Virus record (IMG/VR): IMGVR_UViG_3300030673_000004
Span: 310,001-374,000 of that record
Strand: one strand, 5' to 3'
DNA: 64,000 nucleotides
Shown here one piece after another: positions 2-62,649 of this stretch. Every line of letters begins with the position of its first letter. Positions within the stretch are counted from its first letter, which is position 1. Made by a program: the position numbers and the translations under genes. Under the pieces are notes generated by a model that made no database searches, was not told where the DNA came from, and saw only the letters and a program-made list of their open reading frames with translations.

Positions 2-862
2 ATAGGTGAGTACTCATCCTTCACAGAATATACAGCATTTTTACGTAAGCTGTACACTAAACTAAATGCTACAGCCAATTCAGCTAATAACAAAGCAGAT
101 AAAAATAGTGCTGTTAATCAGATTGTAGATGTCTTAAGTGATATGCTTGATCTAGCAGGTCAATCAGGTGACACAGCCGTAGCCTCCGCATCATCAGCAG
201 CATTTATAGAAAAGATCTTTGCGCCACTAATCAAAGTACCACTCACTACTCGTGAGAAAACAATTCTACCAAAGACCTACCCGGACTATGTTGAAATTGC
301 TCGCTATGTTCATAGCAGAGCAGAACAGGCAGAATTTAATACCTGGCTATTAAATAAGTTAAATGGTATTGTGAAATGTGGACTAGAGCGGTTAGCCGAC
401 CAAAAGAATATCATGGAAGAAACCCGTGATACATTAGGACCCAAAGACTACCTAGTTGAGCTTCAGAAGTATCTAATGGACAACGAATGGATTGGATACA
501 GCAAAAATGAAGTAAAAGAAGCTATAGCAGCCACAAAAGAAATCACACGTGCTGGTTATACCACAAATGTTGATATAGCCAAAGGAAAACAAGTAATACA
601 GCTAGACATTGATGCACTCAAGAGCCATGCATACTTGTATCTAGGTGCCACGCTTGACTCCGAGCTACGTAAAGCCATTTATCGGCTTGCTGACAGTGTC
701 AACAAGAACTACAATATTGAGGGCGGTGCCGCTGGTATGGATGTGCTTATGGCAGCTTCCGCTGTCTATATTCAGGATTTCGCTCGCCAGTGGCTCACAA
801 AGCTGATCAAGGTGTTCAACGACATTGATTTTGATGCTGAAAAGACAAGCAAGAAGCCTTGA
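2..862 (+). CDS. Hypothetical helical protein, 5'-truncated at the window edge
   Basis: The frame of ORF 143..862 stays open back to position 2 (IGEYSSFTEY...DVLSDM), so the gene starts upstream of the window. No recognisable motif. Confidence 0.75.
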   Translation: MGEYSSFTEYTAFLRKLYTKLNATANSANNKADKNSAVNQIVDVLSDMLDLAGQSGDTAVASASSAAFIEKIFAPLIKVPLTTREKTILPKTYPDYVEIARYVHSRAEQAEFNTWLLNKLNGIVKCGLERLADQKNIMEETRDTLGPKDYLVELQKYLMDNEWIGYSKNEVKEAIAATKEITRAGYTTNVDIAKGKQVIQLDIDALKSHAYLYLGATLDSELRKAIYRLADSVNKNYNIEGGAAGMDVLMAASAVYIQDFARQWLTKLIKVFNDIDFDAEKTSKKP

Positions 863-887
863 CATAAGCACAAAAATAAACTATATT
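859..887 (+). promoter_or_regulatory. Sigma70-type promoter TTGACA-N17-TATATT
   Basis: TTGACA 859-864, 17-nt spacer taagcacaaaaataaac, TATATT 882-887. Same hexamers and the same ACAAAAwTAA spacer core as the promoters at 61658-61686 and 62621-62649. Confidence 0.8.
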
Positions 888-923
888 GTATCAACCTGCC
901 TATTTTAGGACGGTTGACCATCC

Positions 924-950
924 AAGGGCACCGAAAGGTGCCTTTTTGTT
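924..950 (+). terminator. Intrinsic terminator in the leader of the GGCT-domain gene
   Basis: Stem aagggcacc / ggtgccttt with a GAAA tetraloop, followed by ttgtt. It lies between the 859 promoter and the RBS/ATG at 961. Confidence 0.75.
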
Positions 951-960
951 GAAAGGATTT

Positions 961-3930
961 ATGGACAGCAACGACCAAAATAGTAAGGATCTGGATAAGG
1001 TTGGCTCTTCTGTGCGCACAGTAGACGGTATTGTATCTGTTACTAACCAAAGTGCAGCAGCAGCAGCCGATCCAACCCTGGCATCGCTCCGGAATAAGAT
1101 CAAGCAGGTATTAGACGCAAACGTACCCGGCGAAAAAGACATGACAGACGAGCAAAAACAAGCCTTTGATGCCCTGTTGGAAAAACCGCAGTATCGTATG
1201 CTCAGCCTCAAAGGTGACGGCCTGTATGTAACCATTGCTACTTTAATCTACGGGAAGTATGCCAAGCTTTCAGGTACGCAGGAATCCGGACTATTCGTAC
1301 ACCTGCTGTGTCTCCCATACGTCTCCGGCTCTACGGCTAACAGCACTATCAAGAGTATCACCAGTATGGCAGATATGCTTGAAGCCGACCTCAAGCCTGC
1401 ACTCCCAAAGTCCCGTTTTAAGATTATCGACACGATCTGCACGTTACTTCGTGATGGCGCAACAGACCTGTCAAGCCTTCTCACAGATCAAGAAATTGCT
1501 ACCGAGATCCAGAAGGAACTGAATCGGAAGACCTCGTCCCTCGCCAATCCACTAAAAAACACATGGGCATTTAGTGCATACACCGTTTTGACAGAACTAC
1601 TGGAAACTAAAATGGGTGTTGACGAGAAGTTTCAGAAAGCCGTCACTGCATTTGTACGGGGTATCGTTACTTTCTACACACAACTGCAGCGAGCCATTTC
1701 GGCTATTGACTTCCCGGATGCCAGTGACAATGACTTTACCTATGAAACAACGGAGTTGTTCAGCGCTGTTAATGAACTAAACGCACAGATCACTACAAAC
1801 CCGGACGAATCAAAGGTCACAGCAACTCTCGCATCTGCTATTCTAGAGCACCGCAAAACAATTAAGGGACTCTGGGCAGATCAAGAATGGCTGCAAATTC
1901 CTTTTCTGGTACCTACACAAGTTGCTGCGTTCAAGACGCAGTACACTAAAGATCTTCTTGCCATGCAGCAAGAGTGTCTGCGTATTTCTGCCTCAGACAC
2001 TGATGAAGTCGCAAAGCGCACCAACTACACAAAGAATCTAGCAGCTTTACATGATCGCATTTCCGTACTTGTGAATCGGTATGGCGGCTGTCTTTCTGTA
2101 TATAAAGCTGCTGGATCAGAGCTTCGGTATTACACGAGTCTAGCTGAGAAGTTCCTGGCATCCAGTGCGCGTATTCTAGCAAACCCAGAAGACACGGTTG
2201 ATGCTAAAGAGAAGCACAATATTGGAGCGCAGCTTCAAGATCTCCGTTCGGAGATTAAAGCAATCATTGAAATGGTTGCTGATAGCAACGTAGAACCAAC
2301 CCGACTCTATGGTGAAGGTGATGATGCGGCTGTTGCCATTGTATCGTACTACGTAGACATGCACAGGTGTCTCTGGTCATTCCTGCACAATGAACCAGTA
2401 CCGGAACTAAGTAAGAAGTTTTCAAATGCCATGGGCTATATCTCCTGGTTAAAGAGTCTGTATGAGCTAAACCACAAGTTCACACAGAACGTACCTAGTT
2501 CCCTATTCACTGAACATACGACGGAGGAAGAAGAACTAGGAGAAGATGATCAGGAAATCCTTGATTTATCGGACCCCGGTAGCGATCCGGAGTATGGTCC
2601 CAAACCAGACTTGGGTGGATTGCCCCCAAGGGGCAAAGTGTACACAAGTCCTCTTACCATGTACCAGGAAGATGCTGCGTTTCACAAGTTCTATGATGAA
2701 TGGGCAGATGCCTATGACAACATTGCGGATGCTTTTGAATTCTATATGGAAGACAAGGATGTTCAACAGGACTACGAGGATTTGGTAGCAGAAGAAACAG
2801 CACCTAGTACTTCAACGACAACAGAAGTAAGTACAGATGAGCAGCAATCAAGTACTACAACGCCGAGCATATCAACAAATGCGCCACCGGATCGTATGAG
2901 TGGACAATCATCTGCCAGCCTTAGCGTCAAGCAGGTTTTAGATAACTTCAAGGGCAATGTTGCTGTTGTTGTAAAGCACCATGCAAATGCACCTAAGTAC
3001 TGGGCAGCAAACTGGGCAGCCTATTGGAATGAATACGAAAGGAACCTAAAGAAGAACTACGGAAAGAAGCCAGCTCGCGCTGCTCGTAGGCAGGAAGAGG
3101 ATATTGTTGGCATCATGCAGTACAAGAGAGCATACAATGATCTCCCTGCTACGATGTTTTTTCGCTCCTATAGCAAACCTAGTACGCACACCACAACAGT
3201 AACCGCTATTCAACCGAAGGATGAAGATTACAAGCACTACTATTTTGCCTATGGCAGCAATTTAGACACAGAGCAGATTGCCAAGCGCACACCATATGCA
3301 AAATTCGTTGGTAGAGTAGCCCTAAAGAACTACAAACTGACCTTTGTGACATACAATTACACATGGAAAGGTGGCGTTGCGAACATTGAACCGTCTGAGG
3401 GCGACGTAGTTTATGGTATCTTATGGCACTTCACTGATGATATGCTCACAAAAATGGATCGCTATGAAGGCCATCCGCACAAGTATGTGCGACACGATGT
3501 CCAAGTACAGAATCTATCCAGTAATACCAACGGACTTCCGCAAGAACTGACAGCGGCTGCTTATGAAATCCAGAACAAATGGGATGTTCATAAGTTTTAC
3601 CCCTCGGGTGAAAATTACTATGAACAGATTAAAGCGGGATACGAGAAGTATCAGTTCCCGCTAGTTCTCCTGGAAGAAGCCCAAAAGTACAGCACAGAGC
3701 ATAAGGTAGACAGGACTAGCGCCTACTACACAGGTGGGTATAACTACGGCGGTAGCCGCTATGCTAACTCGTACTATGGACAAGATGACGACTACTGGGA
3801 CAAGCAATACCCACGTACTGCAACAGGATCGTCTGTGGGCGTAACAAGGTCTCGGGACAGTTCTATCTTCAGTCCTGCTCGCTGGTATCTGGACATGACA
3901 AAGAACTGGTGGGAAGCCTCTGAAGTCTGA
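961..3930 (+). CDS. Large protein with a C-terminal gamma-glutamylcyclotransferase (GGCT/AIG2-like) domain
   Basis: YFAYGSNLD...GGVANI...VYGILW...MDRYEG is the GGCT family signature (from ~3235). Start moved from the TTG at 886 to ATG 961 because of SD AAAGGA and because 886 lies inside the promoter. The N-terminal region is helical and unassigned, followed by acidic and Ser/Thr linkers and a Tyr/Gly-rich tail. Confidence 0.8.
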   Translation: MDSNDQNSKDLDKVGSSVRTVDGIVSVTNQSAAAAADPTLASLRNKIKQVLDANVPGEKDMTDEQKQAFDALLEKPQYRMLSLKGDGLYVTIATLIYGKYAKLSGTQESGLFVHLLCLPYVSGSTANSTIKSITSMADMLEADLKPALPKSRFKIIDTICTLLRDGATDLSSLLTDQEIATEIQKELNRKTSSLANPLKNTWAFSAYTVLTELLETKMGVDEKFQKAVTAFVRGIVTFYTQLQRAISAIDFPDASDNDFTYETTELFSAVNELNAQITTNPDESKVTATLASAILEHRKTIKGLWADQEWLQIPFLVPTQVAAFKTQYTKDLLAMQQECLRISASDTDEVAKRTNYTKNLAALHDRISVLVNRYGGCLSVYKAAGSELRYYTSLAEKFLASSARILANPEDTVDAKEKHNIGAQLQDLRSEIKAIIEMVADSNVEPTRLYGEGDDAAVAIVSYYVDMHRCLWSFLHNEPVPELSKKFSNAMGYISWLKSLYELNHKFTQNVPSSLFTEHTTEEEELGEDDQEILDLSDPGSDPEYGPKPDLGGLPPRGKVYTSPLTMYQEDAAFHKFYDEWADAYDNIADAFEFYMEDKDVQQDYEDLVAEETAPSTSTTTEVSTDEQQSSTTTPSISTNAPPDRMSGQSSASLSVKQVLDNFKGNVAVVVKHHANAPKYWAANWAAYWNEYERNLKKNYGKKPARAARRQEEDIVGIMQYKRAYNDLPATMFFRSYSKPSTHTTTVTAIQPKDEDYKHYYFAYGSNLDTEQIAKRTPYAKFVGRVALKNYKLTFVTYNYTWKGGVANIEPSEGDVVYGILWHFTDDMLTKMDRYEGHPHKYVRHDVQVQNLSSNTNGLPQELTAAAYEIQNKWDVHKFYPSGENYYEQIKAGYEKYQFPLVLLEEAQKYSTEHKVDRTSAYYTGGYNYGGSRYANSYYGQDDDYWDKQYPRTATGSSVGVTRSRDSSIFSPARWYLDMTKNWWEASEV

Positions 3931-39670: not shown

Positions 39671-42600
39671 ATGACTTTGATCAACAACTGGACAAACTCA
39701 ACAGGAACGTTATCACCAACAACGGCTGCCTACGTTTCGGCTATTGGACAAGACAATTATATTCTGACGACAGGCACACAAGGAGACTCCCCCTATTACT
39801 CCAATGATGGCGGAAGTACATGGACAGCAGCAACTGTTAATGATACTTGGGCGGGCAAGACTACTATGTGTCTAGCTACGGTTTCAAGCGATAGTCGCAT
39901 ATACCTAATAAACCAAGCGATTCCCAAACTTTATGTGTCTGTTGACCATGGTGCTACTTATTCTGTAGCCTCATCGGGAAACCAGTATACATGTCTAACA
40001 TGTGTGGGATCAACACTGTTTGCTACTTTAGAAACAGGTACTACACTATATAAAAGTACTGATCATGGTGTAACTTTTACTGCTATAGCAACACCTGATA
40101 CTACGGCCACAGCCATCTTCGTAGCAGCTAACTCTACTTGTTTGTTTTTATGCAGTACCGACACAAATACACATTTAATCAATATGTACAGAAGTCAAGA
40201 TTCGGGAACCTCTTGGACTCAGATTCTGACAAATTATACCATAGGTTTTATAGGCGAACTGTTTCACACAACAAATAGCACATACCTAAGCATTTATGAT
40301 GTCCCATCAAATTCTATTTTATTGCTAAAATCTGACGATAATTTCAGCACCAGCACACCTATAACGGCACTATCGGCAATAATGCCCGCTCCCATAGTTT
40401 TGGGAGGTGCTGACAGCTCTAATGACATCTATGTCGTTAGTTTCTATACGTCTGGTGTGCTTGCTACTAGCAATGATAGCGGGACTTCGTTTGTGAATGA
40501 AGCCCCTGATAGTAACGGGCAAGTAACGCTTGCAATAGGCGATACAAGTATTGTTGCCATTACAAACTCACCTTCGTCGGGTATTACTGCGGTATACAGT
40601 GGAATGCTTCCTGGGGGCATAGTTAAACCCAATAAGCCTACGATTAGTCCAGCAACAATAACAAATGCAAGTCCACTCACAGTAACACTAGAAACAGCTA
40701 CAACAGGCGCAGCACTATACTACACCCTAGACGGAACAGATCCAACAGAATCTTCTACACTGTATACGTCTCCGTTTACACTAACCTACGCTGTACCCAC
40801 AATATGCACAGTGAAAGCTATCGCAGTAGCTAACTCCATATCAAGTACAGTAGCCACACAGGTATACCATATCGGCAACCAGGTAAGCGCACCTGTCATC
40901 ACAGGTACCCTAAATACCTATGGTGCCAACATGACAATCACCATCACAGATACTACGGATGGTGCTCTTATCTACTATACGGATGATGGAACTACCCCAA
41001 CAACAACATCTGCAGCATATACAGAGCCATTTTTAACGTTTGAATCCTCTATTGATATTAAAGCAATCGCAGTCAAATCGGGATACTTTGATAGTAGTAT
41101 TGCAGAGTCACTAATTAATACAGGAATCGCAGTCTCCACGTATCCCACACTGGGACCCTATCTTAATACGTACAATTGCAACCCTGTTGCTTCTGCTACT
41201 AGAAAATTTACAATAGGTACTACAGCACACATTGAAATGCTAAGTACTACAGATGGTGTACATGACCAAGCACCCATCTATTACACACTTGACGGATCCA
41301 CACCAACAATAGCAAGTACACAATATGCAGCTCCGCTAAGTATTACAGAATCCTGTGTAGTCAAAGCGGTTTCTATTAAAGGTGTGAAGACACCCACAAT
41401 TGGACCTGTTGCAACTATCACGTACACGTTTACGGCTGGAGTACTTGCAAAACCAACAGCCTACACATTAGGTGCTGAATATGTAGATCTTACAACAGGT
41501 ACGCATACAACAACTACAAGTGATCCTGGTTATGTGTTAACGGCTGTATTTATCCCCGACTACAATAACGGGATAGGAGCTTTAGCTACAGCAGAAGGAA
41601 CTCTAGGAAATGTTACCCCAAGCTACATTTACTTGTGTGATCCAATTACGTATGAACCCTTCAAGAGACTCACACAACTCGATAACGGCGATAATATCCG
41701 AGCCTTGGCTTACTCAACAGACACAGGCACATTATATGCAGCTACAGAAAACAAAAACCTCTACAGTATTGATCTTAACACAGAAACGATAACAACACTT
41801 AGTGTACTATTACCAAACCCAATATACTATTATTTAATATATAACAACGTAGATCAGTGCTTGTATGGATACTGCTCGGGGTCCATCAATTCACTTGTAA
41901 AATACAATACAGTAACAAGCACGCTTTCGACAATAACTTCTAATGCACTTTACCATGTTGATTTTTGTGATCCTATAACAGGAACTCTTTATGGGCACTC
42001 AGGCACAGGTAACAATCCTGGTCTTTTTACCATAGACCCAAACACAGGAGTAGCTACAGAAGTAATCACAACTACAACATCCTATGATAAGGTACTTCAT
42101 GATAACATAAGTGGTAATACATATGCGCTTACATACCCGGGCAACGCTGCAGTTACTGCATACACATTAGACTTAGCAGCACGAACTGAAACATTAAAAT
42201 TTACAGCAGCACTTACGCAGGGAGTCCAGGACACGACTATTGCCAGTACAGCTACAGTACCAGCACCCCTATTCTCTGTTGCGGGCGGATCATACAACAT
42301 AGCACAAACCGTAGCAATAACAAATAGACTTACAGGGATAAATATCTATTATACGCTTGATGGAACAGCACCAACAGCTAACTCTACATTATACACAGAA
42401 CCTCTACTCGTAGAGTATCCTCTAACGCTAAAAGCAATTGCAACTAAATCCGGATTTGCACAAAGTTATGCCACAGTAGCAACATACAATATAAGCTATA
42501 CAAAAGTACCTAAACCTATATTATCTGTAGCATCTGGAAGCTTTACAAACGACCAAACTGTAACATTATCAGATACAAAAGAAGGTGTAACATTCTACTA

Positions 42601-43723
42601 CACAATAGATGGAACAACACCAACAACAACATCTTTGCTCTACACAGGTCCAATCACTATTTCAGGAAATACAACACTTCAAGCTATTGGTATATTTGAA
42701 GGTTTAACAAACAGTGACATAGTATCTGCTACATACACATTCTCATGCATAACACCTACAGCATCCATCCCGGCAGGAACATGGGGTGCTACAAAAATAA
42801 TTACGCTTTCTTCTGAAACAAATAATACAAAAATCTACTACACCACAGATGGTACAGCACCAACCCAAAATTCTGCTATTTATAGTACGCCAATACATTT
42901 AGTAACGACAGCAACATTAGCGTTCGTAGCAACAAAACATGGATATGCTTCCACGTCAGTAGTCACAAACGTGTATACAATCATTCGAGGGGACCTATAC
43001 TATGGAAGCTATAATGTAAAAGTTGTCAATACAACAAATAATGTTTCTGCTAAGCTAAACTCGTTCTATGACGGCAACATGTGTGCCGTAGCTGCTGACG
43101 GTCAGTCTCTTTATGCCTTAGGCACAGCGGGCCTAACAACAATAAACCCTCACACAGGAGAGTACACAACAGTTGCACTTTCAATAACAGATACTATTGA
43201 GGGTGATTCATTCGTATCAGCAACATATTACGATAATGCAATATATGCATGCGTATCCAGTGGTGGTTCAGATAGTGGCGTTTATAAAATAGACCCAAAA
43301 ACATACAGTGTGACATTAGTACGTAAACACAATTATGTACAAGGCATAACTGTATATAATGAAAAGATCTATTTTTGCACTCCCTATGAAGCTATAAAGT
43401 ATATGAATCTTGATGGGTCCAATGAGACAGTACTGAACTCATCCACATCATATATGTGGGGAAGCCTAATCGTCTTTAATGACTATTTATATGCAGGAAG
43501 TTATGAATATACTAATACGTCATTAACAAAAGTACCTGGCGGGATTTACAAAATAGATCTAACAACAGGAAGCATCGTTAGTATAATAAATCAAGAGCTA
43601 GATCGCTACTGGGTAGGTCTTGCTGCCGGTACGGATCAGCTCTATGCTAGAGATAGCTTAACAGGCATATATAGAGTTAATGTACACAACAATACAGTAA
43701 CTCAGATTGTGAGTGAATTCTAA
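39671..43723 (+). CDS. Fibre/adhesin-like protein: N-terminal BNR propeller, six CHB_HEX_C_1 repeats and two further propeller-like regions
   Basis: Asp-boxes (S.D.G.TW/TY/TF) and YYT.DG..PT x6. Confidence 0.7.
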   Translation: MTLINNWTNSTGTLSPTTAAYVSAIGQDNYILTTGTQGDSPYYSNDGGSTWTAATVNDTWAGKTTMCLATVSSDSRIYLINQAIPKLYVSVDHGATYSVASSGNQYTCLTCVGSTLFATLETGTTLYKSTDHGVTFTAIATPDTTATAIFVAANSTCLFLCSTDTNTHLINMYRSQDSGTSWTQILTNYTIGFIGELFHTTNSTYLSIYDVPSNSILLLKSDDNFSTSTPITALSAIMPAPIVLGGADSSNDIYVVSFYTSGVLATSNDSGTSFVNEAPDSNGQVTLAIGDTSIVAITNSPSSGITAVYSGMLPGGIVKPNKPTISPATITNASPLTVTLETATTGAALYYTLDGTDPTESSTLYTSPFTLTYAVPTICTVKAIAVANSISSTVATQVYHIGNQVSAPVITGTLNTYGANMTITITDTTDGALIYYTDDGTTPTTTSAAYTEPFLTFESSIDIKAIAVKSGYFDSSIAESLINTGIAVSTYPTLGPYLNTYNCNPVASATRKFTIGTTAHIEMLSTTDGVHDQAPIYYTLDGSTPTIASTQYAAPLSITESCVVKAVSIKGVKTPTIGPVATITYTFTAGVLAKPTAYTLGAEYVDLTTGTHTTTTSDPGYVLTAVFIPDYNNGIGALATAEGTLGNVTPSYIYLCDPITYEPFKRLTQLDNGDNIRALAYSTDTGTLYAATENKNLYSIDLNTETITTLSVLLPNPIYYYLIYNNVDQCLYGYCSGSINSLVKYNTVTSTLSTITSNALYHVDFCDPITGTLYGHSGTGNNPGLFTIDPNTGVATEVITTTTSYDKVLHDNISGNTYALTYPGNAAVTAYTLDLAARTETLKFTAALTQGVQDTTIASTATVPAPLFSVAGGSYNIAQTVAITNRLTGINIYYTLDGTAPTANSTLYTEPLLVEYPLTLKAIATKSGFAQSYATVATYNISYTKVPKPILSVASGSFTNDQTVTLSDTKEGVTFYYTIDGTTPTTTSLLYTGPITISGNTTLQAIGIFEGLTNSDIVSATYTFSCITPTASIPAGTWGATKIITLSSETNNTKIYYTTDGTAPTQNSAIYSTPIHLVTTATLAFVATKHGYASTSVVTNVYTIIRGDLYYGSYNVKVVNTTNNVSAKLNSFYDGNMCAVAADGQSLYALGTAGLTTINPHTGEYTTVALSITDTIEGDSFVSATYYDNAIYACVSSGGSDSGVYKIDPKTYSVTLVRKHNYVQGITVYNEKIYFCTPYEAIKYMNLDGSNETVLNSSTSYMWGSLIVFNDYLYAGSYEYTNTSLTKVPGGIYKIDLTTGSIVSIINQELDRYWVGLAAGTDQLYARDSLTGIYRVNVHNNTVTQIVSEF

Positions 43724-44586
43724 TGAGTGCTGCTAATCTAACGTATTACGTATTCCTAGTAAGTTCTCCCGTAATAACACCAGCATCCGGTTACTATAGT
43801 GCAAACCAAAACATGCAAGTAACAATAACCAACCAAACAGATGGCGCTGTAGTTTTTTACACAACAGATGGAAGTGATCCTACAACAGCATCACAGGCAT
43901 ACTCAGGACAATTTAATATAACAGCACCAGCTACAATAAAGGCTATTGCGGTTGGAACCACTACAAGCAGTATTGTTGAAGAAAACTTTAGTGTTCATGA
44001 GCGAGCACAACCCCCTACAATACTACCAGCACCAGGAACATACCAAGGCTCCATTACAGCTACAATTACAACGACCACAGTTGGTGCTTCTATATATTAC
44101 TCAACTAATGGAACTAACCCAACAGCCACGTCTGGGATACTTTACTCCGGCCCCATTACAGTAAGTAAAACAGAAAAGATTAAAGCTATTGCCGTCTCAT
44201 CAAATTATGACAATAGTAATATCACAGCCGCATCATACACAATAACTGAGTTACCAATAGCACCAGCACCATCTATAACACCAAAAACAGGACAATATAC
44301 AACATCAACAGTTGTTACTCTCCAAACAGCACTAGCTTCTGGGGTTATCTATTACACAGTAGATGGAACTATCCCGACAGTTCATTCTACACATTATACA
44401 AATCCAATTACAGTGACTGAAGATACTACAATAAACGCTATTGTTATTGCAGATAACTATAAAAACAGTGCTATAACATCATCAGTGTATAGCCTTGTAG
44501 CCCCGCAACAAAGCTATCTAAACATATATGACTTCAAAATGGGATTACGAAAAGTAGACTCTTTTGCAACGGACAAAGACATATGA
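43723..44586 (+). CDS. Three CHB_HEX_C_1 repeats plus a C-terminal YDFKMGLR motif
   Basis: FYTTDGSDP, YYSTNGTNP and YYTVDGTIP. The C-terminal motif is shared with 35709..38960. Confidence 0.7.
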   Translation: MSAANLTYYVFLVSSPVITPASGYYSANQNMQVTITNQTDGAVVFYTTDGSDPTTASQAYSGQFNITAPATIKAIAVGTTTSSIVEENFSVHERAQPPTILPAPGTYQGSITATITTTTVGASIYYSTNGTNPTATSGILYSGPITVSKTEKIKAIAVSSNYDNSNITAASYTITELPIAPAPSITPKTGQYTTSTVVTLQTALASGVIYYTVDGTIPTVHSTHYTNPITVTEDTTINAIVIADNYKNSAITSSVYSLVAPQQSYLNIYDFKMGLRKVDSFATDKDI

Positions 44587-45104
44587 CAACGAGACAACCG
44601 CAAAACTACCCATGGTACATTGAATTAAGAAAACACCTAATAGATCCTTTCTTCAAATCACAGAAAACGGGATCCATAGGACGCATGTTCTCTACAGTAA
44701 CATTTGGCATCTGCTGTTATTACTGGTTAAGCAGAACAGGCTCATCTAATCATGAAGCACCGGCATCCCTGCTTCAAGTGTTCTTCTGGACTACGGGTTA
44801 TGTGTTCGCCAATAAGGTAGTACATACTACATCAAAACACATAGCATCTTACCAGAACGCCGCCGTGCCAGCGATACCTTCAATTAATAGCTTCGGTCAC
44901 GGCACCACACAGGTACAGCCAACTACACCCCCAGTACCTACGGTAAAGCAAGCTGCAGCAAAAGGAACCAAGACATCAAAAAAGACAGCACCTGTAATCC
45001 CTACAGAAGATTCACAGGAACCTGAGGATTCATCTGATCAAACCACAGATGACAATGCAACGCAAGCGTCGGGTGATACTGTCATAGATAGTGATGCAGG
45101 ATAA
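44583..45104 (+). CDS. Membrane protein with two hydrophobic segments (holin-like) and a Pro/Thr/acidic tail
   Basis: Hydrophobic segments IGRMFSTVTFGICCYYWLS and SLLQVFFWTTGYVFANK. Confidence 0.5.
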   Translation: MTTRQPQNYPWYIELRKHLIDPFFKSQKTGSIGRMFSTVTFGICCYYWLSRTGSSNHEAPASLLQVFFWTTGYVFANKVVHTTSKHIASYQNAAVPAIPSINSFGHGTTQVQPTTPPVPTVKQAAAKGTKTSKKTAPVIPTEDSQEPEDSSDQTTDDNATQASGDTVIDSDAG

Positions 45105-45144
45105 ATAAAAAGAGGACCCAGGGCATGCACACCCGAGGTCCTCT
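45103..45144 (-). terminator. Intrinsic terminator on the minus strand (ends the small RNA)
   Basis: Minus strand reads AGAGGACC-ucGGG-loop-CCCu-gGGUCCUCU-UUUUAUUU. The U-tract exists only on the minus strand. Confidence 0.75.
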
Positions 45145-45261
45145 CCCGGTAGTCAAAAGCTCTTCAGGAGCTTAGTGTCACCTCAACTAACTGTTGAGCT
45201 GATGACTACAGGCTACGTTTCGAGCCGAAGCCCGTAAGGATGTCTCTGAAGAACCGTCCTC
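45105..45261 (-). ncRNA. Novel structured small RNA (~157 nt)
   Basis: Bounded by a near-consensus promoter and a terminator, with no ORF. Three-way junction: closing stem 45149-55/45203-09, hairpins 45157-73 and 45182-98. Additional hairpin 45211-26 and a 7-bp long-range pairing 45161-67/45246-52. Confidence 0.75.
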
Positions 45262-45267
45262 AATCAA

Positions 45268-45296
45268 AATATAACATACTACCTAGTGATTGTCAA
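45268..45296 (-). promoter_or_regulatory. Sigma70 promoter TTGACA-N17-TATATT with extended -10 TG
   Basis: Minus strand reads TTGACA atcactaggtagtatgt TATATT. Predicted start is the G at ~45261. Confidence 0.8.
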
Positions 45297-45346
45297 GGTC
45301 TAATAACTTCTTCGTAGAAGATATTGGCAAAAGGTACCTATTACTC

Positions 45347-47584
45347 ATGGCTAACACATCTAGAACTCGTCCAGACTTTAGCAATGCCTTGATGGCACCG
45401 GACATGCTAGCAACAGCCTTTGATACGGCTGATAATGATCTAAAGAATGTTCTCCAAGCTGTCACAGCTAATACGGGAACAGGTATCGTTTCAACCATCG
45501 ACCCAACAGCAGAGAACTCTCCCCTATGGGTTTTGGCAGTAACAGATAAAACGATGTACTGGGATGTGTACCCAGGAACAGCCGTTACAGCCTCGGGGAA
45601 ATTTCTAACAACTACAAGCACAACACGAGTTCCCCTAGTGGATATAAGTGACGGTGCCGAGAATTTGATCATAATAAAAGCTGTTACAACACCATTAGAA
45701 CACTATGTACTTAATAGTGTAGGTGATGTTGTAGATGCCGGTGACATGGAGTCATGTGAGATTGGCTGCATGACGTACAGCGAATATCTAAATCTGCAAG
45801 CAACGGCTACGACAGATACATATGATACGCTAAACATAGACGACATTGTTGTTCTTGGGGTTGTAGCATGGGATGCATCTGCCGGGCCAACGTTATACAC
45901 AGCAGCAACAACACGCTACTCTTGGCTGCGCCCATGGTTCACAGCCGTGGATGTAGAACATCGCTCCAAAATTGGTACGGGGACAGTATCAGATACTAAC
46001 CCGCATGGACAAAGCTTAGCAGATCTACAGATAGGTGGTACAACCATCTATGAACATCTGACCAGCTCAGGTATGATCTACAGCAAAGACTACAGCACTA
46101 TTGGCATACCCGGTGTTTATTGCTATCAGAGATTTCTTTCAGATGCCATACAATTAGATACTACAGGCGAAGTAACAAGCGACTCCCCCTATGGTGGGTT
46201 GAATGCACAATATGTAGTACTGTCTAATTTCCCAAACACAATCACGTCCGTTCGCAAGGTAAGCAGTAAGCGTGAGATGTGCGGTGGCATGGTCCCACGA
46301 AGCAACATTTTTGTTTTCTCCCGGCAGGAAACCATAGATGATACCATAGATATTTGGTACTTCAAAACAGATAGCTTAACCGTATCTTCTGTTGCATCCA
46401 CGTCACTCACACTGACAACAATGCAAAACAGTGATTTGGCTATTACAGGTGGACAAGCGTTATCCTCTGTAGGGAACACGACATTACAATTCCGTAGATA
46501 TGGAAGTATTCCACGGTCACTAACAGCTTTAATCTCAACAACAGGAAAGCTGTTCCCAGACCCTTACGTTCTTGTGCAGAGTACTCTCGTAACGGATGTA
46601 TCAGGGGACAGTCAAACAAATGAGATTGAACTATATGCACCGGCCCTACTAGGTGTCGGCGTAAGTTCTTTTGCAGCCACACAGAGTGCCTATCTAGCTG
46701 TTCGACTCTACGGTACGGATACAAATGGGGCTGCTATCAAAGAAACTCTAGAGTTCAAAGGCTCTGCCGTTACTGAAGCACCTGTTGGATCAACAGTTGA
46801 AAGCGCCACACAAGTTCTGTTCACACAACAGACATTCTACTCCCTCGTATCTTGGGAAGTCATTACAACAGCATCAATGGCACCAGCAAACCTAAATTTT
46901 GGTTGCGCTATCACGATTTATGCGAAAACAGATCTTGCCAGTTCTAAGCTAGCATCGGCAGTATCCGCTCACTGGACAGGCAGTTCTATCATAAATGCAC
47001 GAGACTCCCGCCGAATCTTACCTATAGTAACGGACGGCGAATACGGGTTAACACCGATAACGCAGGCGGCTGAGAGCATAGGTTTAGCTAGCCAGATAAA
47101 CTCCGTTACATTAGGTAGAGTGCCCGCACAACTTATATGCGCCGAAGACTTCAGACAGCCTAAATACATCAACATAACTAAATGTGCTTGGCGTGGAAAT
47201 AAGCTCCAATCTCCTAGCATAACAAGCATTCACGCCACATCTACAAATGTTGTAGAGTGCTATAAATCTCGGTTCATACCGACACTCATGAGTGAAACAT
47301 ACACATTTCAAGTATGTGTTGTTTTATTCGGCAATGATGTTCTAGCTGATACAGGAAGCGTTCGCTGCATTATTCGTGATTGGTCTGATGTAGAATATGA
47401 GACGATACTAAAACCCTATAGCGGTGATGCTAACAAGCGTACATATCTCTGCTACTCCACTATACCAGCACGGGCAGTAGCTTTCACTATTTCAGGCACA
47501 GCTAATGGATTTGCTGCATATCTAATGCAAAACTCTAATCCAGATGCTGCCTACTACACCACATTGACACTAACAGGTATCTAA
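45347..47584 (+). CDS. Virion structural protein; fused equivalent of 23776..26367 plus the N-terminus of 26364..27218
   Basis: Start moved to ATG 45347 (SD AAGGT), because the TTG at 45290 overlaps the antisense -35 box. Paralogy blocks as listed for 23776..26367. Confidence 0.7.
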   Translation: MANTSRTRPDFSNALMAPDMLATAFDTADNDLKNVLQAVTANTGTGIVSTIDPTAENSPLWVLAVTDKTMYWDVYPGTAVTASGKFLTTTSTTRVPLVDISDGAENLIIIKAVTTPLEHYVLNSVGDVVDAGDMESCEIGCMTYSEYLNLQATATTDTYDTLNIDDIVVLGVVAWDASAGPTLYTAATTRYSWLRPWFTAVDVEHRSKIGTGTVSDTNPHGQSLADLQIGGTTIYEHLTSSGMIYSKDYSTIGIPGVYCYQRFLSDAIQLDTTGEVTSDSPYGGLNAQYVVLSNFPNTITSVRKVSSKREMCGGMVPRSNIFVFSRQETIDDTIDIWYFKTDSLTVSSVASTSLTLTTMQNSDLAITGGQALSSVGNTTLQFRRYGSIPRSLTALISTTGKLFPDPYVLVQSTLVTDVSGDSQTNEIELYAPALLGVGVSSFAATQSAYLAVRLYGTDTNGAAIKETLEFKGSAVTEAPVGSTVESATQVLFTQQTFYSLVSWEVITTASMAPANLNFGCAITIYAKTDLASSKLASAVSAHWTGSSIINARDSRRILPIVTDGEYGLTPITQAAESIGLASQINSVTLGRVPAQLICAEDFRQPKYINITKCAWRGNKLQSPSITSIHATSTNVVECYKSRFIPTLMSETYTFQVCVVLFGNDVLADTGSVRCIIRDWSDVEYETILKPYSGDANKRTYLCYSTIPARAVAFTISGTANGFAAYLMQNSNPDAAYYTTLTLTGI

Positions 47585-61442: not shown

Positions 61443-61625
61443 TTAGATATCGAAATTAAATTCAGACCTAAGCAAATCAAATGAATTAACAATATCATCC
61501 ATCCCGCACTCCCCGGTATAAATCTCCAAAGAAGCCCCATGATCAGCCAAGAACTGCTTGAAATCCTTGAAATCCTTTCGGAAATCTTCCTGTTCTTGAA
61601 GAATCTGTTTCTGATTCGTAGCCAT
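61443..61625 (-). CDS. Small acidic early-type protein (60 aa)
   Basis: Start moved to ATG 61625 (SD AAGGAG at 61634-61639), immediately downstream of a promoter. Confidence 0.7.
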   Translation of the reverse strand: MATNQKQILQEQEDFRKDFKDFKQFLADHGASLEIYTGECGMDDIVNSFDLLRSEFNFDI

Positions 61626-61639
61626 TAGAGTAACTCCTT

Positions 61640-61686
61640 GTTGAGGTGACAAGAACAAATATACATTAATTTTGTACTCTTGTCAA
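61640..61686 (-). promoter_or_regulatory. Early-type sigma70 promoter TTGACA-N17-TATATT with a conserved leader box
   Basis: -35 at 61681-86 and -10 at 61658-63. 37 bp (61640-61676) are identical to 62603-62639. 8-bp inverted repeat TGACAAGA/TCTTGTCA. Confidence 0.85.
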
Positions 61687-62006: not shown

Positions 62007-62588
62007 TTAAGCAGCCTTAGACACCGAAGAGCAACGCTTGTCCAAATTGCGGATGTACACCTCAATCATAGCAAGAAACTCTCGGCTGTAAATAGAATCA
62101 AATTCCAAGTGAAATGCCTCAATAGCACGCTCAAACAACTCACGATACTTATTAGCGGACATTCCCGCATACTTAGCCAGGTTACCAACCTGACCAACAA
62201 AATAGTTGCTCATACCATACTCACCAACAAGAATATTCGTGCTGAAATCACCCAAGTCACAATCTAAAGGATTGCGCTTCTGAGAGGCGTGCTGTACAAA
62301 AATGTCACGATCAGAACCCTGGGCATACACAGAAGCCACAGAATGTAAGTCAATCTGACAGTCAACACTACGACCCTCAGCATCAACCAAAAGCAGCATT
62401 GAGCTGATACGAGGTTCGGCCTTAATCACAGAAACGCGAGTCAGATCAAAGTAGATGCCGCCGTGCATATGGTTAATGTGAGACATCTTTACAAAGATAT
62501 GCTTATCGCCTGTAAGGCTCTCCCCATCACGAGTGCTCAAGGCGAAAATGTTCTTGCGATCCGTAGCAAAAAGAGTTCCTGCCTTCAT
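62007..62588 (-). CDS. Hypothetical early-type protein
   Basis: SD GUAAGGA directly after the 62621-62649 promoter. Confidence 0.7.
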   Translation of the reverse strand: MKAGTLFATDRKNIFALSTRDGESLTGDKHIFVKMSHINHMHGGIYFDLTRVSVIKAEPRISSMLLLVDAEGRSVDCQIDLHSVASVYAQGSDRDIFVQHASQKRNPLDCDLGDFSTNILVGEYGMSNYFVGQVGNLAKYAGMSANKYRELFERAIEAFHLEFDSIYSREFLAMIEVYIRNLDKRCSSVSKAA

Positions 62589-62602: not shown

Positions 62603-62649
62603 GTTGAGGTGACAAGAACAAATATACATTAATTTTGTATGCTTGTCAA
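62603..62649 (-). promoter_or_regulatory. Early-type sigma70 promoter TTGACA-N17-TATATT with a conserved leader box
   Basis: -35 at 62644-49 and -10 at 62621-26. Near-identical to 61640-61686. Confidence 0.85.

What the first reader, a model, noticed from the sequence alone, without database searches (positions are those of the whole stretch)
45103..45296. Previously unannotated structured small RNA gene hidden antisense in the structural operon
Seen: a minus-strand extended -10 promoter TTGACA-N17-TATATT (45296-45268), about 157 nt with no ORF, then a GC-rich terminator with a U-tract (45144-45103). Internal structure: a three-way junction (GUAGUCA/UGACUAC closing two hairpins), a GGCU/AGCC hairpin, and a 5' UCUUCAG complementary to CUGAAGA in a junction hairpin (pseudoknot or switch). 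The 5' GAGGAC can alternatively pair with the terminator's GUCCUC. I could not assign it to any RNA family I know.
Basis: seen in the sequence. Interest (0 to 1): 0.85.

Follow-up and report, generated by a model that had tools for sequence, protein, structure and literature searches.

The report
Jumbo-phage small RNA gene, antisense-embedded
A 159-base non-coding RNA gene with its own promoter and terminator sits backwards between two tail-region genes of an uncultivated 375-kb phage, and its most conserved tip is complementary to the shared 5' leader of the phage's own early-type genes, so it probably regulates them by base pairing.

Summary
At 45296-45103 on the minus strand there is a near-consensus extended -10 promoter, about 159 nt without an ORF, and a hairpin plus U-tract terminator. 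No Rfam family or tRNA matches.

- **Origin:** the window is part of IMG/VR contig 3300030673_000004, 375 kb.
- **Distribution:** the unit is a roughly 210-bp insertion found only in the closest relatives. There are three sequence variants. Relatives at 64-68% protein identity have a 40-nt gap at the same place.
- **Conservation:** across the variants the promoter hexamers, terminator orientation and RNA architecture are kept while other sequence diverges. The 61-nt hairpin is 60/61 identical between two phages whose flanking genes are 72-80% identical.
- **Structure:** against the third variant, that domain folds as one long irregular hairpin with 7 compensatory pairs.
- **Candidate target:** the only block invariant in all variants is the hairpin tip. 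Its 12 nt are exactly complementary to the 5' leader, next to the Shine-Dalgarno site, of a repeated promoter-leader cassette. At least 8 exact copies lie in this genome, and the cassette is also in the third variant's phage.

Best reading: a phage-encoded base-pairing sRNA that acts on its own early-class mRNAs. I put gene reality at about 0.85 and this mechanism at about 0.45. It is a new RNA family of a known kind.

The parts
45268..45296 (-). Sigma-70-type extended -10 promoter: TTGACA, 17 nt, TGn, TATATT
   Evidence: The hexamers and TG are kept in variant v3 while its spacer differs at most positions. The promoter is 34/35 identical in v2.
45103..45261 (-). Predicted 159-nt non-coding transcript. 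The start is inferred at the purine 7-8 nt after the -10 hexamer. The end is the U tract.
   Evidence: Conservation among the three variants begins exactly at the predicted start (RGGACGGUUC), whereas the 7 nt before it differ. There is no ORF.
45237..45260 (-). 5' hairpin, AGGA / loop / UCCU, carrying the conserved 5' motif GGACGGUUC
   Evidence: AGGA/UCCU in v1 becomes GGGA/UCCC in v2, a compensatory change. The motif GGACGGTT recurs only once more in the available DNA, at 908-915 behind another promoter.
45221..45234 (-). Small hairpin CGGGC[UUCG]GCUCG between the conserved UACGG and CGRAAC
Evidence: The outer three pairs are invariant. The inner stem GC/GC of v1 and v3 is replaced by UACA/UGUA in v2.
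45149..45209 (-). Long irregular hairpin domain. The closing helix is GUAGUCA/UGACUAC and the conserved apical hairpin is RGUUGAG[GUGACR]CUAAGCY.
   Evidence: 98.3% of cells paired, 7 pairs changed on both sides, 0 of 500 shuffles as good, slid controls 21-43% paired; the three-way-junction alternative is broken in v3; 60/61 identical between v1 and v2.
45176..45187 (-). Candidate seed GUUGAGGUGACA, formed by the 5' arm and loop of the apical hairpin
   Evidence: It lies in the only block invariant in all three variants. It is exactly complementary to UGUCACCUCAAC in the cassette leaders. The duplex is -21.6 kcal/mol. The apical hairpin alone is only -2.5 kcal/mol.
45103..45146 (-). Intrinsic terminator: a GC-rich hairpin and then UUUUUAUUU. 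The U tract overlaps the stop codon of the convergent 173-aa gene by 2 nt.
   Evidence: The v2 stem contains three G-U pairs. The v3 terminator has an unrelated sequence with the same orientation.
61640..61686 (-). Predicted target 1: promoter-leader cassette with promoter 61686-61658 and leader 12-mer 61651-61640, followed by AAGGAG and the ATG at 61625 of a 60-aa ORF
62603..62649 (-). Predicted target 2: the same cassette with promoter 62649-62621 and leader 12-mer 62614-62603, followed by UAAGGA and the ATG at 62588 of a 193-aa ORF

Best explanation
The locus is a self-contained small RNA gene that was inserted, in the common ancestor of the closest relatives, between the stop codon of a 173-aa gene and the conserved hairpin and ribosome-binding site of a 745-aa gene in the tail-region block of a 375-kb phage.

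Host-type RNA polymerase would start at about 45261 and stop at the terminator at 45103. The product would be a stable RNA of about 159 nt with four parts: a 5' hairpin, a small UUCG hairpin, one long irregular hairpin and the terminator.

The weakly paired tip of the long hairpin presents 12 nt, GUUGAGGUGACA. I propose (inferred) that these pair with the first 12 nt, UGUCACCUCAAC, of the short 5' leader shared by a class of phage mRNAs. Those mRNAs are made from a repeated promoter-leader cassette. The resulting duplex would end one to two bases before the Shine-Dalgarno sequence.

The most likely consequence is co-ordinated repression of translation, and perhaps altered stability, of these small early-type genes. 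That would be an RNA-based class-wide control. The direction of the effect, repression or protection and activation, is not determined.

Shown in silico: the gene, its conservation, its fold and the complementarity. Inferred: expression, pairing in vivo, the outcome, and the early timing of the cassette genes.
For: Evidence that the gene is real:
- Promoter, terminator and fold.
- Presence or absence pattern. The unit is present in relatives with 85-92% identity of the 745-aa protein (L003-L006, L131). It is absent, with a gap of only about 40 nt, at 64-68% identity (L007-L010) and in more distant relatives (L011, L132, L133).
- Promoter hexamers are kept over a diverged spacer, and the terminator is non-homologous but equally oriented in v3.
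- The hairpin is 60/61 and the promoter 34/35 identical, against 72-80% for the flanking genes.
- Seven compensatory pairs in a gapless alignment.

Evidence for the mechanism:
- The only block invariant in all variants is the hairpin tip.
- Its 12-mer is complementary to the leader of a cassette found with an exact leader at 8 places in the fetched parts of this genome, each followed by AAGGAG-like Shine-Dalgarno sequences and an ATG. Four further near-variant leaders exist.
- The same cassettes and leader are present in the phage that carries variant v3. L185 comes from the same sample, SRR13208902, as L006.
- The single seed difference in v3 (A to G) keeps the pair as G-U.
- The complementarity starts at the predicted mRNA 5' end.
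- The duplex is -21.6 kcal/mol and the net cofold gain is -10 to -15 kcal/mol.
- The tip hairpin and the leader are each nearly unstructured.
- No other repeated complementarity of 11 nt or more exists between the three RNAs and about 190 kb of own and related phage DNA.
Against: - There is no expression data of any kind. The host is unknown.
- Only three variants exist and two are near-identical in the hairpin, so the covariation rests on essentially one comparison.
- Seed and leader are both simply conserved. There is no compensatory change between them.
- Substitutions among leader copies are not enriched for wobble-compatible changes: 4 of 6 transitions, against about 73% expected from composition.
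- Energy ranking of 71 translation-start regions puts a cassette leader second, behind a spurious ORF, at z of about -2.4. This is not decisive.
- A 12-bp DNA site in inverted orientation would look the same to a DNA-binding protein.
- The sRNA promoter is of the same host-type class as its proposed targets, so a simple early-to-late timing logic is not evident.
- Several units with the same promoter have other leaders.
Confidence: 0.45

Rival explanations
1. A cis-acting antisense unit. The convergent promoter and the RNA act on the plus-strand structural transcript that crosses this intergenic region. They could do so by transcriptional interference or by forming a perfect 159-bp duplex that is cut by a double-strand-specific RNase. 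Either would uncouple or time expression of the 745-aa gene and the genes after it.
For: The unit sits exactly between two co-oriented plus-strand genes with no plus-strand terminator (the hairpin lacks a T run on that strand). Any read-through plus-strand RNA is fully complementary to it. Its presence or absence is tied to this one junction.
Against: Perfect cis complementarity needs no conserved sequence or fold. Yet the hairpin is 98% conserved against 72-80% for the flanks, and it keeps pairing through 7 compensatory changes. A conserved 18-nt island with an external complement is unexplained by this model. The RNA overlaps coding sequence by only 2 nt.
Confidence: 0.2
2. The RNA works through a protein or a host target, not through the cassette leaders. 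It could be a decoy or scaffold for an RNA-binding protein that recognises the conserved tip hairpin and the 5' GGACGGUUC motif, or a regulator of host mRNAs. The 12-nt match would then reflect a shared DNA operator, or the recombinational origin of the gene from cassette pieces.
For: The RNA shares same-sense motifs with other leaders. GGACGGTT also occurs behind the promoter at 859-887. AUCGGAAC plus CAACGGUGA of variant v2 also occur in a leader in L188. This suggests mosaic origin or common protein sites. The leader DNA contains an inverted repeat around the 12-mer. There is no seed-leader covariation.
Against: The match is on the strands that make the two RNAs complementary. It spans exactly the loop and 5' arm of a weak hairpin, and it begins at the predicted mRNA 5' end. 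By my own estimate, a chance 12-nt complement between the 18-nt island and a 25-nt leader has a probability of about 6e-6. No candidate protein is known. Host targets cannot be examined because the host is unknown.
Confidence: 0.2
3. A non-functional remnant. A promoter-bearing fragment with a terminator landed in the intergenic region and is drifting. The fold is incidental.
For: The unit is dispensable, since it is absent from relatives. The middle part is very variable, with a 19-nt deletion in v1 and a large insertion in v3.
Against: Promoter and hairpin are much better conserved than the neighbouring genes. Helices are kept by compensatory changes. The terminator was replaced by another functional-looking terminator rather than lost.
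Confidence: 0.07

Closest known systems
P1/P7 c4 RNA, and by my recollection the P4 CI RNA: phage immunity RNAs
   Same: Small structured phage RNAs whose loop sequences pair with short complementary sites near ribosome-binding sites in the phage's own early transcripts. [quoted passage not shown]
   Different: From my own knowledge, those RNAs are processed out of the very operon they control, in temperate phages or plasmid-prophages. Each acts on one transcript. Here the RNA has its own promoter and terminator and lies in a structural gene block of a 375-kb phage. Its complement is repeated at 8 or more separate promoters. There is no sequence or Rfam similarity.
Trans-acting phage sRNAs such as lambda PreS and VP882 VpdS
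   Same: Independent small genes in phage genomes that act by short imperfect base pairing (PMC12197685).
   Different: Those characterised so far mainly target host mRNAs or host sRNAs and depend on Hfq. Here the only identified complement is in the phage's own mRNAs. Chaperone dependence is unknown. The RNA, at 159-214 nt, is longer.
Antisense RNAs of lytic and jumbo phages seen by RNA-seq, such as the phiR1-37 misc RNAs, PAK_P4as15 and cyanophage CfrI
   Same: Minus-strand transcripts embedded in gene blocks of large lytic phages. Most have no known function (PMC12197685).
   Different: Those are defined by expression data and mostly overlap coding regions. This one is defined by comparative sequence evidence, lies in an intergenic insertion, and has a candidate trans target.
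T4 RegA and RegB (protein regulators; my own knowledge)
   Same: Class-wide post-transcriptional shut-down of early mRNAs through a shared feature of their translation-initiation regions.
   Different: Those regulators are proteins. Here the proposed regulator is an RNA. This is an analogy of logic only.

Membership tests
Any Rfam 15 family | Covariance-model score at or above the family's gathering threshold | tested here: not met
   No hit in the whole window at gathering thresholds. At E <= 10 the only hits in 44900-45500 are two chance snoRNA matches of 13-16 bits. Nothing at E <= 1 in L005, L006 and L131, which carry variants v2 and v3. No tRNA or tmRNA.
Independent bacterial-type sRNA gene | Own promoter, Rho-independent terminator and no conserved ORF | tested here: met
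   Promoter hexamers and terminator orientation are conserved in three variants.
Independent bacterial-type sRNA gene | A detectable transcript of the predicted size and strand | not testable with these tools
   No transcriptome data are available here. The phage is known only from metagenomes.
Base-pairing (seed-type) regulatory sRNA | A conserved, accessible segment complementary to target mRNAs at or near the ribosome-binding site | tested here: met
   The 12-nt seed lies in the only invariant block. Its exact complement is found in 8 leaders next to the Shine-Dalgarno sequence. The tip hairpin is only -2.5 to -4.2 kcal/mol.
Base-pairing (seed-type) regulatory sRNA | Co-variation of seed and target, or regulation shown by compensatory mutations | tested here: inconclusive
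   Seed and leader are both conserved. The one seed change (A to G in v3) keeps a G-U pair. Leader variants show no excess of pairing-compatible changes.
cis-encoded antisense RNA | Overlaps a gene or UTR on the opposite strand that it regulates | tested here: inconclusive
   It overlaps only 2 nt of the 173-aa gene (stop codon, 45102-45104). It is complementary to the intergenic part of any plus-strand read-through transcript. Whether such a transcript exists is untested.
P1 c4 / P4 CI-type immunity RNA | Processed from the leader of the operon it controls in a temperate element | tested here: not met
   It has its own promoter and terminator. It lies about 16 kb from the nearest cassette targets, inside a structural block. 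No lysogeny genes were seen among the proteins scanned.
Hammerhead ribozyme (considered because the plus strand carries CUGAUGA at 45200-45206) | Conserved catalytic core CUGAUGA ... GAAA with three helices | tested here: not met
   No Rfam hammerhead hit even at E <= 10. The core G is A in variant v2 (CUAAUGA). Five extra bases separate the motif from the only candidate helix II.
CsrB/RsmZ-type protein-sponge RNA | Many GGA motifs displayed in hairpin loops | tested here: not met
   By reading the transcripts, there are two GGA motifs in v1 and four or five in v2 and v3. Most lie in stems or linkers. No Rfam match.

The most novel reading that the evidence does not exclude
One small RNA acts as a class-wide switch for a whole set of phage genes. 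By pairing with the identical 5'-terminal leader stamped onto a dozen or more promoter-leader cassettes scattered over a 375-kb genome, it would shut off, or protect, all of these early-type mRNAs together. This would be an RNA counterpart of protein regulators such as T4 RegA/RegB. It would have been gained as a mobile 210-bp module by one lineage of an otherwise unknown jumbo-phage group.
Probability: 0.35. Interest if true: 0.75.

Novelty: new member of a known kind. Interest (0 to 1): 0.55.

Why it matters
Phage-encoded regulatory RNAs are still few, and almost all come from temperate model phages. For large lytic phages there are mostly unexplained antisense transcripts (PMC12197685).

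Here an uncultivated jumbo phage offers a compact case defined by comparative sequence evidence:
- a clear gene;
- a fold supported by compensatory changes;
- natural presence or absence variants;
- a concrete, testable target, namely a 12-nt leader shared by many early-type genes.

If the pairing is real, a phage can control a temporal gene class with one RNA. The promoter-leader cassettes would then be regulatory as well as recombinational modules. The pieces are small enough to test in a surrogate host with reporter fusions.

Tried and rejected
**Searches that found nothing useful**
- Rfam at gathering and relaxed thresholds, and ARAGORN: nothing.
- GenBank phages by megablast and tblastn: no relatives.
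- PHROGs and Pfam on neighbouring genes: almost nothing beyond CHB_HEX_C_1/Fn3_assoc, Baseplate_J, SNF2 and glycosyltransferase.
- IMG/VR protein and DNA scans: only the source contig itself. One pattern was too loose and returned about 119 chance loci. The core pattern returned only self.
- JGI metagenome scan with the 20-nt core: self plus one chance hit inside a GC-rich gene.
- GTDB genome scan with the leader: three chance hits.
- Covariance model of the hairpin: no paralogue in 189 kb of own and related DNA.

**Ideas rejected**
- Hammerhead reading of the plus-strand CUGAUGA: rejected, see the membership test.
- Small-peptide reading: rejected. There is no start codon after the Shine-Dalgarno-like GAGGUGA in v1 and no conserved frame across variants, by reading.
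- The 129-aa antisense ORF 45283-45672: rejected, because it has stops in L003 and L006.
- An antiterminator switch of 5' GAGGAC against the terminator arm: rejected as a conserved feature, because v3 has an unrelated terminator.

**Inconclusive or failed**
- Wobble enrichment among leader variants as a test of pairing: uninformative.
- Genome-wide energy scan: timed out twice. The reduced scan was not decisive.
- I could not fetch the early regions of relatives that lack the RNA, because the look-ups were exhausted.

Full report
**Setting.** The window is bases 310001-374000 of IMG/VR contig IMGVR_UViG_3300030673_000004, which is 375,537 bp. The same contig is Ga0302286_10000002 in JGI. Almost all long ORFs run on the plus strand. 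They include a Baseplate_J protein, several very large proteins with CHB_HEX_C_1/Fn3_assoc repeats, glycosyltransferases and an SNF2 helicase. PHROGs recognises almost nothing, and GenBank phages hold no relative.

The finding lies in the 242-nt gap between a 173-aa gene (44583-45104) and a 745-aa gene. The true ATG of the 745-aa gene is at 45347.

**The observation.**
- The minus strand carries TTGACA, a 17-nt spacer, TG-n and TATATT at 45296-45268. This is the best promoter-like site of the region.
- It is one of only four perfect TTGACA-N17-TATATT sites in the window.
- From the predicted start, about 45261, to the U tract at 45111-45103 there is no ORF.
- The terminator hairpin, about 45146-45112, is followed by a T run only on the minus strand.
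- The RNA folds with z = -4.2. The complementary strand folds equally well, so the strand must be decided on other grounds.
- Rfam and ARAGORN find nothing.

**Relatives.** Homologues of the two flanking proteins led to metagenomic contigs from ENA, Logan and JGI.
- The unit is present where the 745-aa protein is 92% identical. This is variant v2, identical in eight contigs (L003-L005, L134-L138).
- It is also present where the protein is 85% identical. This is variant v3, pieced together from L131 and L006, which overlap by 104 nt with 2 mismatches.
- In relatives at 64-68% identity the stop codon of the upstream gene is followed after about 10 nt by a conserved hairpin and the ribosome-binding site of the 745-aa gene. 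The unit is missing there (L007-L010).
- More distant relatives also lack it (L011, L132, L133).
- By parsimony the unit is a gain of roughly 210 bp in one lineage. It consists exactly of terminator, RNA, promoter and a few flanking bases.

**Evidence that it is a functional minus-strand RNA gene.**
1. In v3 the 17-nt spacer differs at most positions, but TTGACA, TG and TATATT are intact.
2. Sequence conservation among the three variants starts at the predicted +1 (RGGACGGUUC). The seven bases before it differ.
3. The v3 terminator has an unrelated sequence but sits at the same place with a U tract on the same strand.
4. Helices contain G-U pairs, which would be A-C on the other strand. There are three in the v2 terminator, three or four in the v3 5' hairpin, and one invariant in the tip hairpin.
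5. Between v1 and v2 the flanking genes are 72-80% identical at the DNA level, but the 61-nt hairpin domain is 60/61 and the promoter 34/35.
6. The 129-aa ORF upstream on the minus strand is interrupted in relatives.

**The fold.** MAFFT aligns the 3' domain of the three variants without internal gaps (A2).
- One long irregular hairpin pairs 98.3% of cells. It has 7 pairs changed on both sides. No shuffle out of 500 reaches this, and slid controls pair only 21-43%.
- The closing helix is GUAGUCA/UGACUAC in v1 and v2. In v3 it is UUAUUACUC/GAGUAAUAA.
Its second inner hairpin is broken at 4 of 6 pairs in v3. Its first survives only through wobble pairs.
- In v1 the two folds are close in energy. 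RNAfold picks the junction for v1 and the long hairpin for v2, which differs by one base. A conformational alternative cannot be excluded.
- Only the long hairpin has comparative support. This rests on effectively one independent comparison, v1/v2 against v3.
- Upstream, all variants share UACGG, a small hairpin and CGRAAC. The inner stem of that hairpin is GC/GC with a UUCG or UGUA loop in v1 and v3, and UACA/UGUA in v2. This excludes the GGCU/AGCC hairpin.
- The 5' hairpin shows AGGA/UCCU changing to GGGA/UCCC.
- A middle hairpin (CCUG ... CAGG) is present in v2 and v3, enlarged in v3 and deleted in v1.
- The UCUUCAG/CUGAAGA complement and the 5' GAGGAC/terminator pairing do not exist in v3.

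**A candidate target.** The only block identical in all variants is the tip of the long hairpin, RGUUGAG[GUGACR]CUAAGCY. Its first 12 nt, GUUGAGGUGACA (45187-45176), have two exact complements in the window, at 61651-61640 and 62614-62603 on the minus strand.

Both complements lie directly behind two of the other three perfect promoters. They are part of a nearly identical cassette: TTGACA, a conserved A-rich spacer, TATATT, TGTTCTT, GTCACCTCAAC, an AAGGAG-like Shine-Dalgarno sequence and an ATG.

- Pattern scans of IMG/VR recovered 8 copies with the exact leader from other parts of the same contig.
- In all, 19 distinct units with this promoter were recovered. About 12 of them have this leader or a near variant.
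- The genes behind them are small (60-338 aa). They have no Pfam family except one RlaP-type nucleotidyltransferase. With the host-type promoters this suggests early genes, but that is inference.
- The phage that carries v3 has the same cassettes and leader. L185 is from the same sample as L006.

The two RNAs are complementary as transcribed. The complementarity begins at the predicted first or second base of the mRNA and ends one to two bases before the Shine-Dalgarno sequence. The duplex is worth -21.6 kcal/mol. The net gain after unfolding is -10 to -15 kcal/mol. The tip hairpin (-2.5 to -4.2) and the leader (-1.5) are barely structured on their own. No other repeated complement of 11 nt or more was found between any variant and about 190 kb of own or related DNA.

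**Limits of the target argument.**
- Seed and leader do not co-vary. The single seed change in v3 (A to G) merely keeps a G-U pair.
- Among leader copies, 4 of 6 transition types would keep pairing. Composition predicts about 73%, so this says nothing.
- In an energy ranking of 71 start regions a cassette leader came second, at z of about -2.4.
- A DNA-binding protein would see the same 12 bp in either orientation.
- The RNA shares same-sense motifs with other leaders: GGACGGTT at 908-915, and AUCGGAAC plus CAACGGUGA in L188 for v2. It may therefore have been assembled from cassette pieces.
- The sign of regulation is open. A duplex abutting the Shine-Dalgarno sequence on a 25-nt leader should hinder 30S binding, from general knowledge of sRNA action. 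Pairing at an mRNA 5' end can also protect against 5'-end-dependent decay.
- The leader DNA contains an inverted repeat, (U)UCUUGU[CACCUCA]ACAAGGA, that overlaps the Shine-Dalgarno sequence. It is kept with U-G to C-G and G-C to A-U changes among copies. If read-through transcripts contain it, pairing with the sRNA would open it.

**Comparison with known systems.** Phage-encoded regulatory RNAs are an established kind: OOP, sar, c4, PreS, VpdS and the antisense RNAs of phiR1-37 and PAK_P4 (PMC12197685). The closest in logic are c4 and, from my own knowledge, P4 CI, whose loops pair with short sites in the phage's own early transcripts. This RNA differs from them in four ways:
- it is an independent gene;
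- it sits in a structural block of a jumbo phage;
- its complement is repeated at many promoters;
- it has no sequence relationship to them.

I therefore file it as a new member, a new RNA family, of a known kind. The class-wide regulon is the more novel reading and is still unproven.

**Verdict.** Its main interpretation is supported by comparative evidence. Its fold is revised. A specific target hypothesis is added. My confidence that this is a real sRNA gene is about 0.85. My confidence that it acts by pairing with the cassette leaders is about 0.45. No step had to be referred.

Noticed in passing
window 61658-61686 and 62621-62649 (minus strand); also L143, L148, L156, L171, L173, L186, L188, L191, L197 (same contig): There is a repeated promoter-leader cassette with an almost invariant spacer (A-n-CATACAAAATTAATG) between TTGACA and TATATT. 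Nineteen distinct units were found in the fetched parts of the genome, mostly in front of small ORFs of unknown function. The arrangement recalls the mobile early-promoter cassettes of T4-type phages (my recollection, not tested).
   Followed up: partly
window 859-961 (+): A perfect promoter (859-887) is followed by a hairpin with the same GGACGGTT motif as the sRNA 5' end (908-915). Next come a GC-rich hairpin with a T run (about 926-950), a Shine-Dalgarno sequence, and the ATG (961) of a 989-aa protein with a GGACT domain. It looks like a leader-terminator (attenuator) or a second tiny RNA.
   Followed up: partly
L188 minus strand, about 2126-2230 in reverse-complement numbering (same contig, outside the window): The same cassette promoter is followed directly by a hairpin plus a U-rich tract, then GGGAGA and an ATG. 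This is a second promoter-terminator-gene arrangement like the one at 859-961.
   Followed up: no
L188 minus strand, about 1186-1300 in reverse-complement numbering: The cassette promoter has a leader of about 90 nt whose first hairpin contains AUCGGAAC and CAACGGUGA. The same two blocks occur in the middle domain of sRNA variant v2 (L003). This hints at exchange of pieces between leaders and the sRNA gene.
   Followed up: no
window 45315-45346 (+); L007 688-727; L010 1169-1208; L132 2412-2455: A plus-strand hairpin just upstream of the ribosome-binding site of the 745-aa gene is conserved in all relatives, including those without the sRNA. In L007 and L010 it reads CTTCTACCTAG ... CTAGGTAGAAG followed by GGTGG. 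It may control translation of that gene.
   Followed up: no
leaders at window 61658-61625 and 62621-62588 (minus strand) and their copies: An inverted repeat, (U)UCUUGU [CACCUCA] ACAAGGA, has a 3' arm that is the Shine-Dalgarno region. It is kept among copies by U-G to C-G and G-C to A-U changes. The 5' arm lies at or before the predicted transcription start, so it may form only in read-through transcripts.
   Followed up: partly
window 39671-43723 (+) compared with L003 703-2352: The 1350-aa CHB_HEX_C_1-repeat protein of this phage is replaced by an unrelated-looking 549-aa protein in the 92%-identity relative. The genes on both sides are conserved. This looks like a swapped module, perhaps for receptor binding.
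   Followed up: no
window 45283-45672 (-): A 129-aa ORF lies antisense to the start of the 745-aa gene. It is interrupted by stop codons in L003 and L006, so it is almost certainly not a gene.
   Followed up: yes
L173 463-1479 (-), same contig: One cassette drives a 338-aa protein with an RlaP / nucleotidyltransferase domain (RNA-repair-associated family). It is the only cassette gene with a Pfam hit.
   Followed up: no
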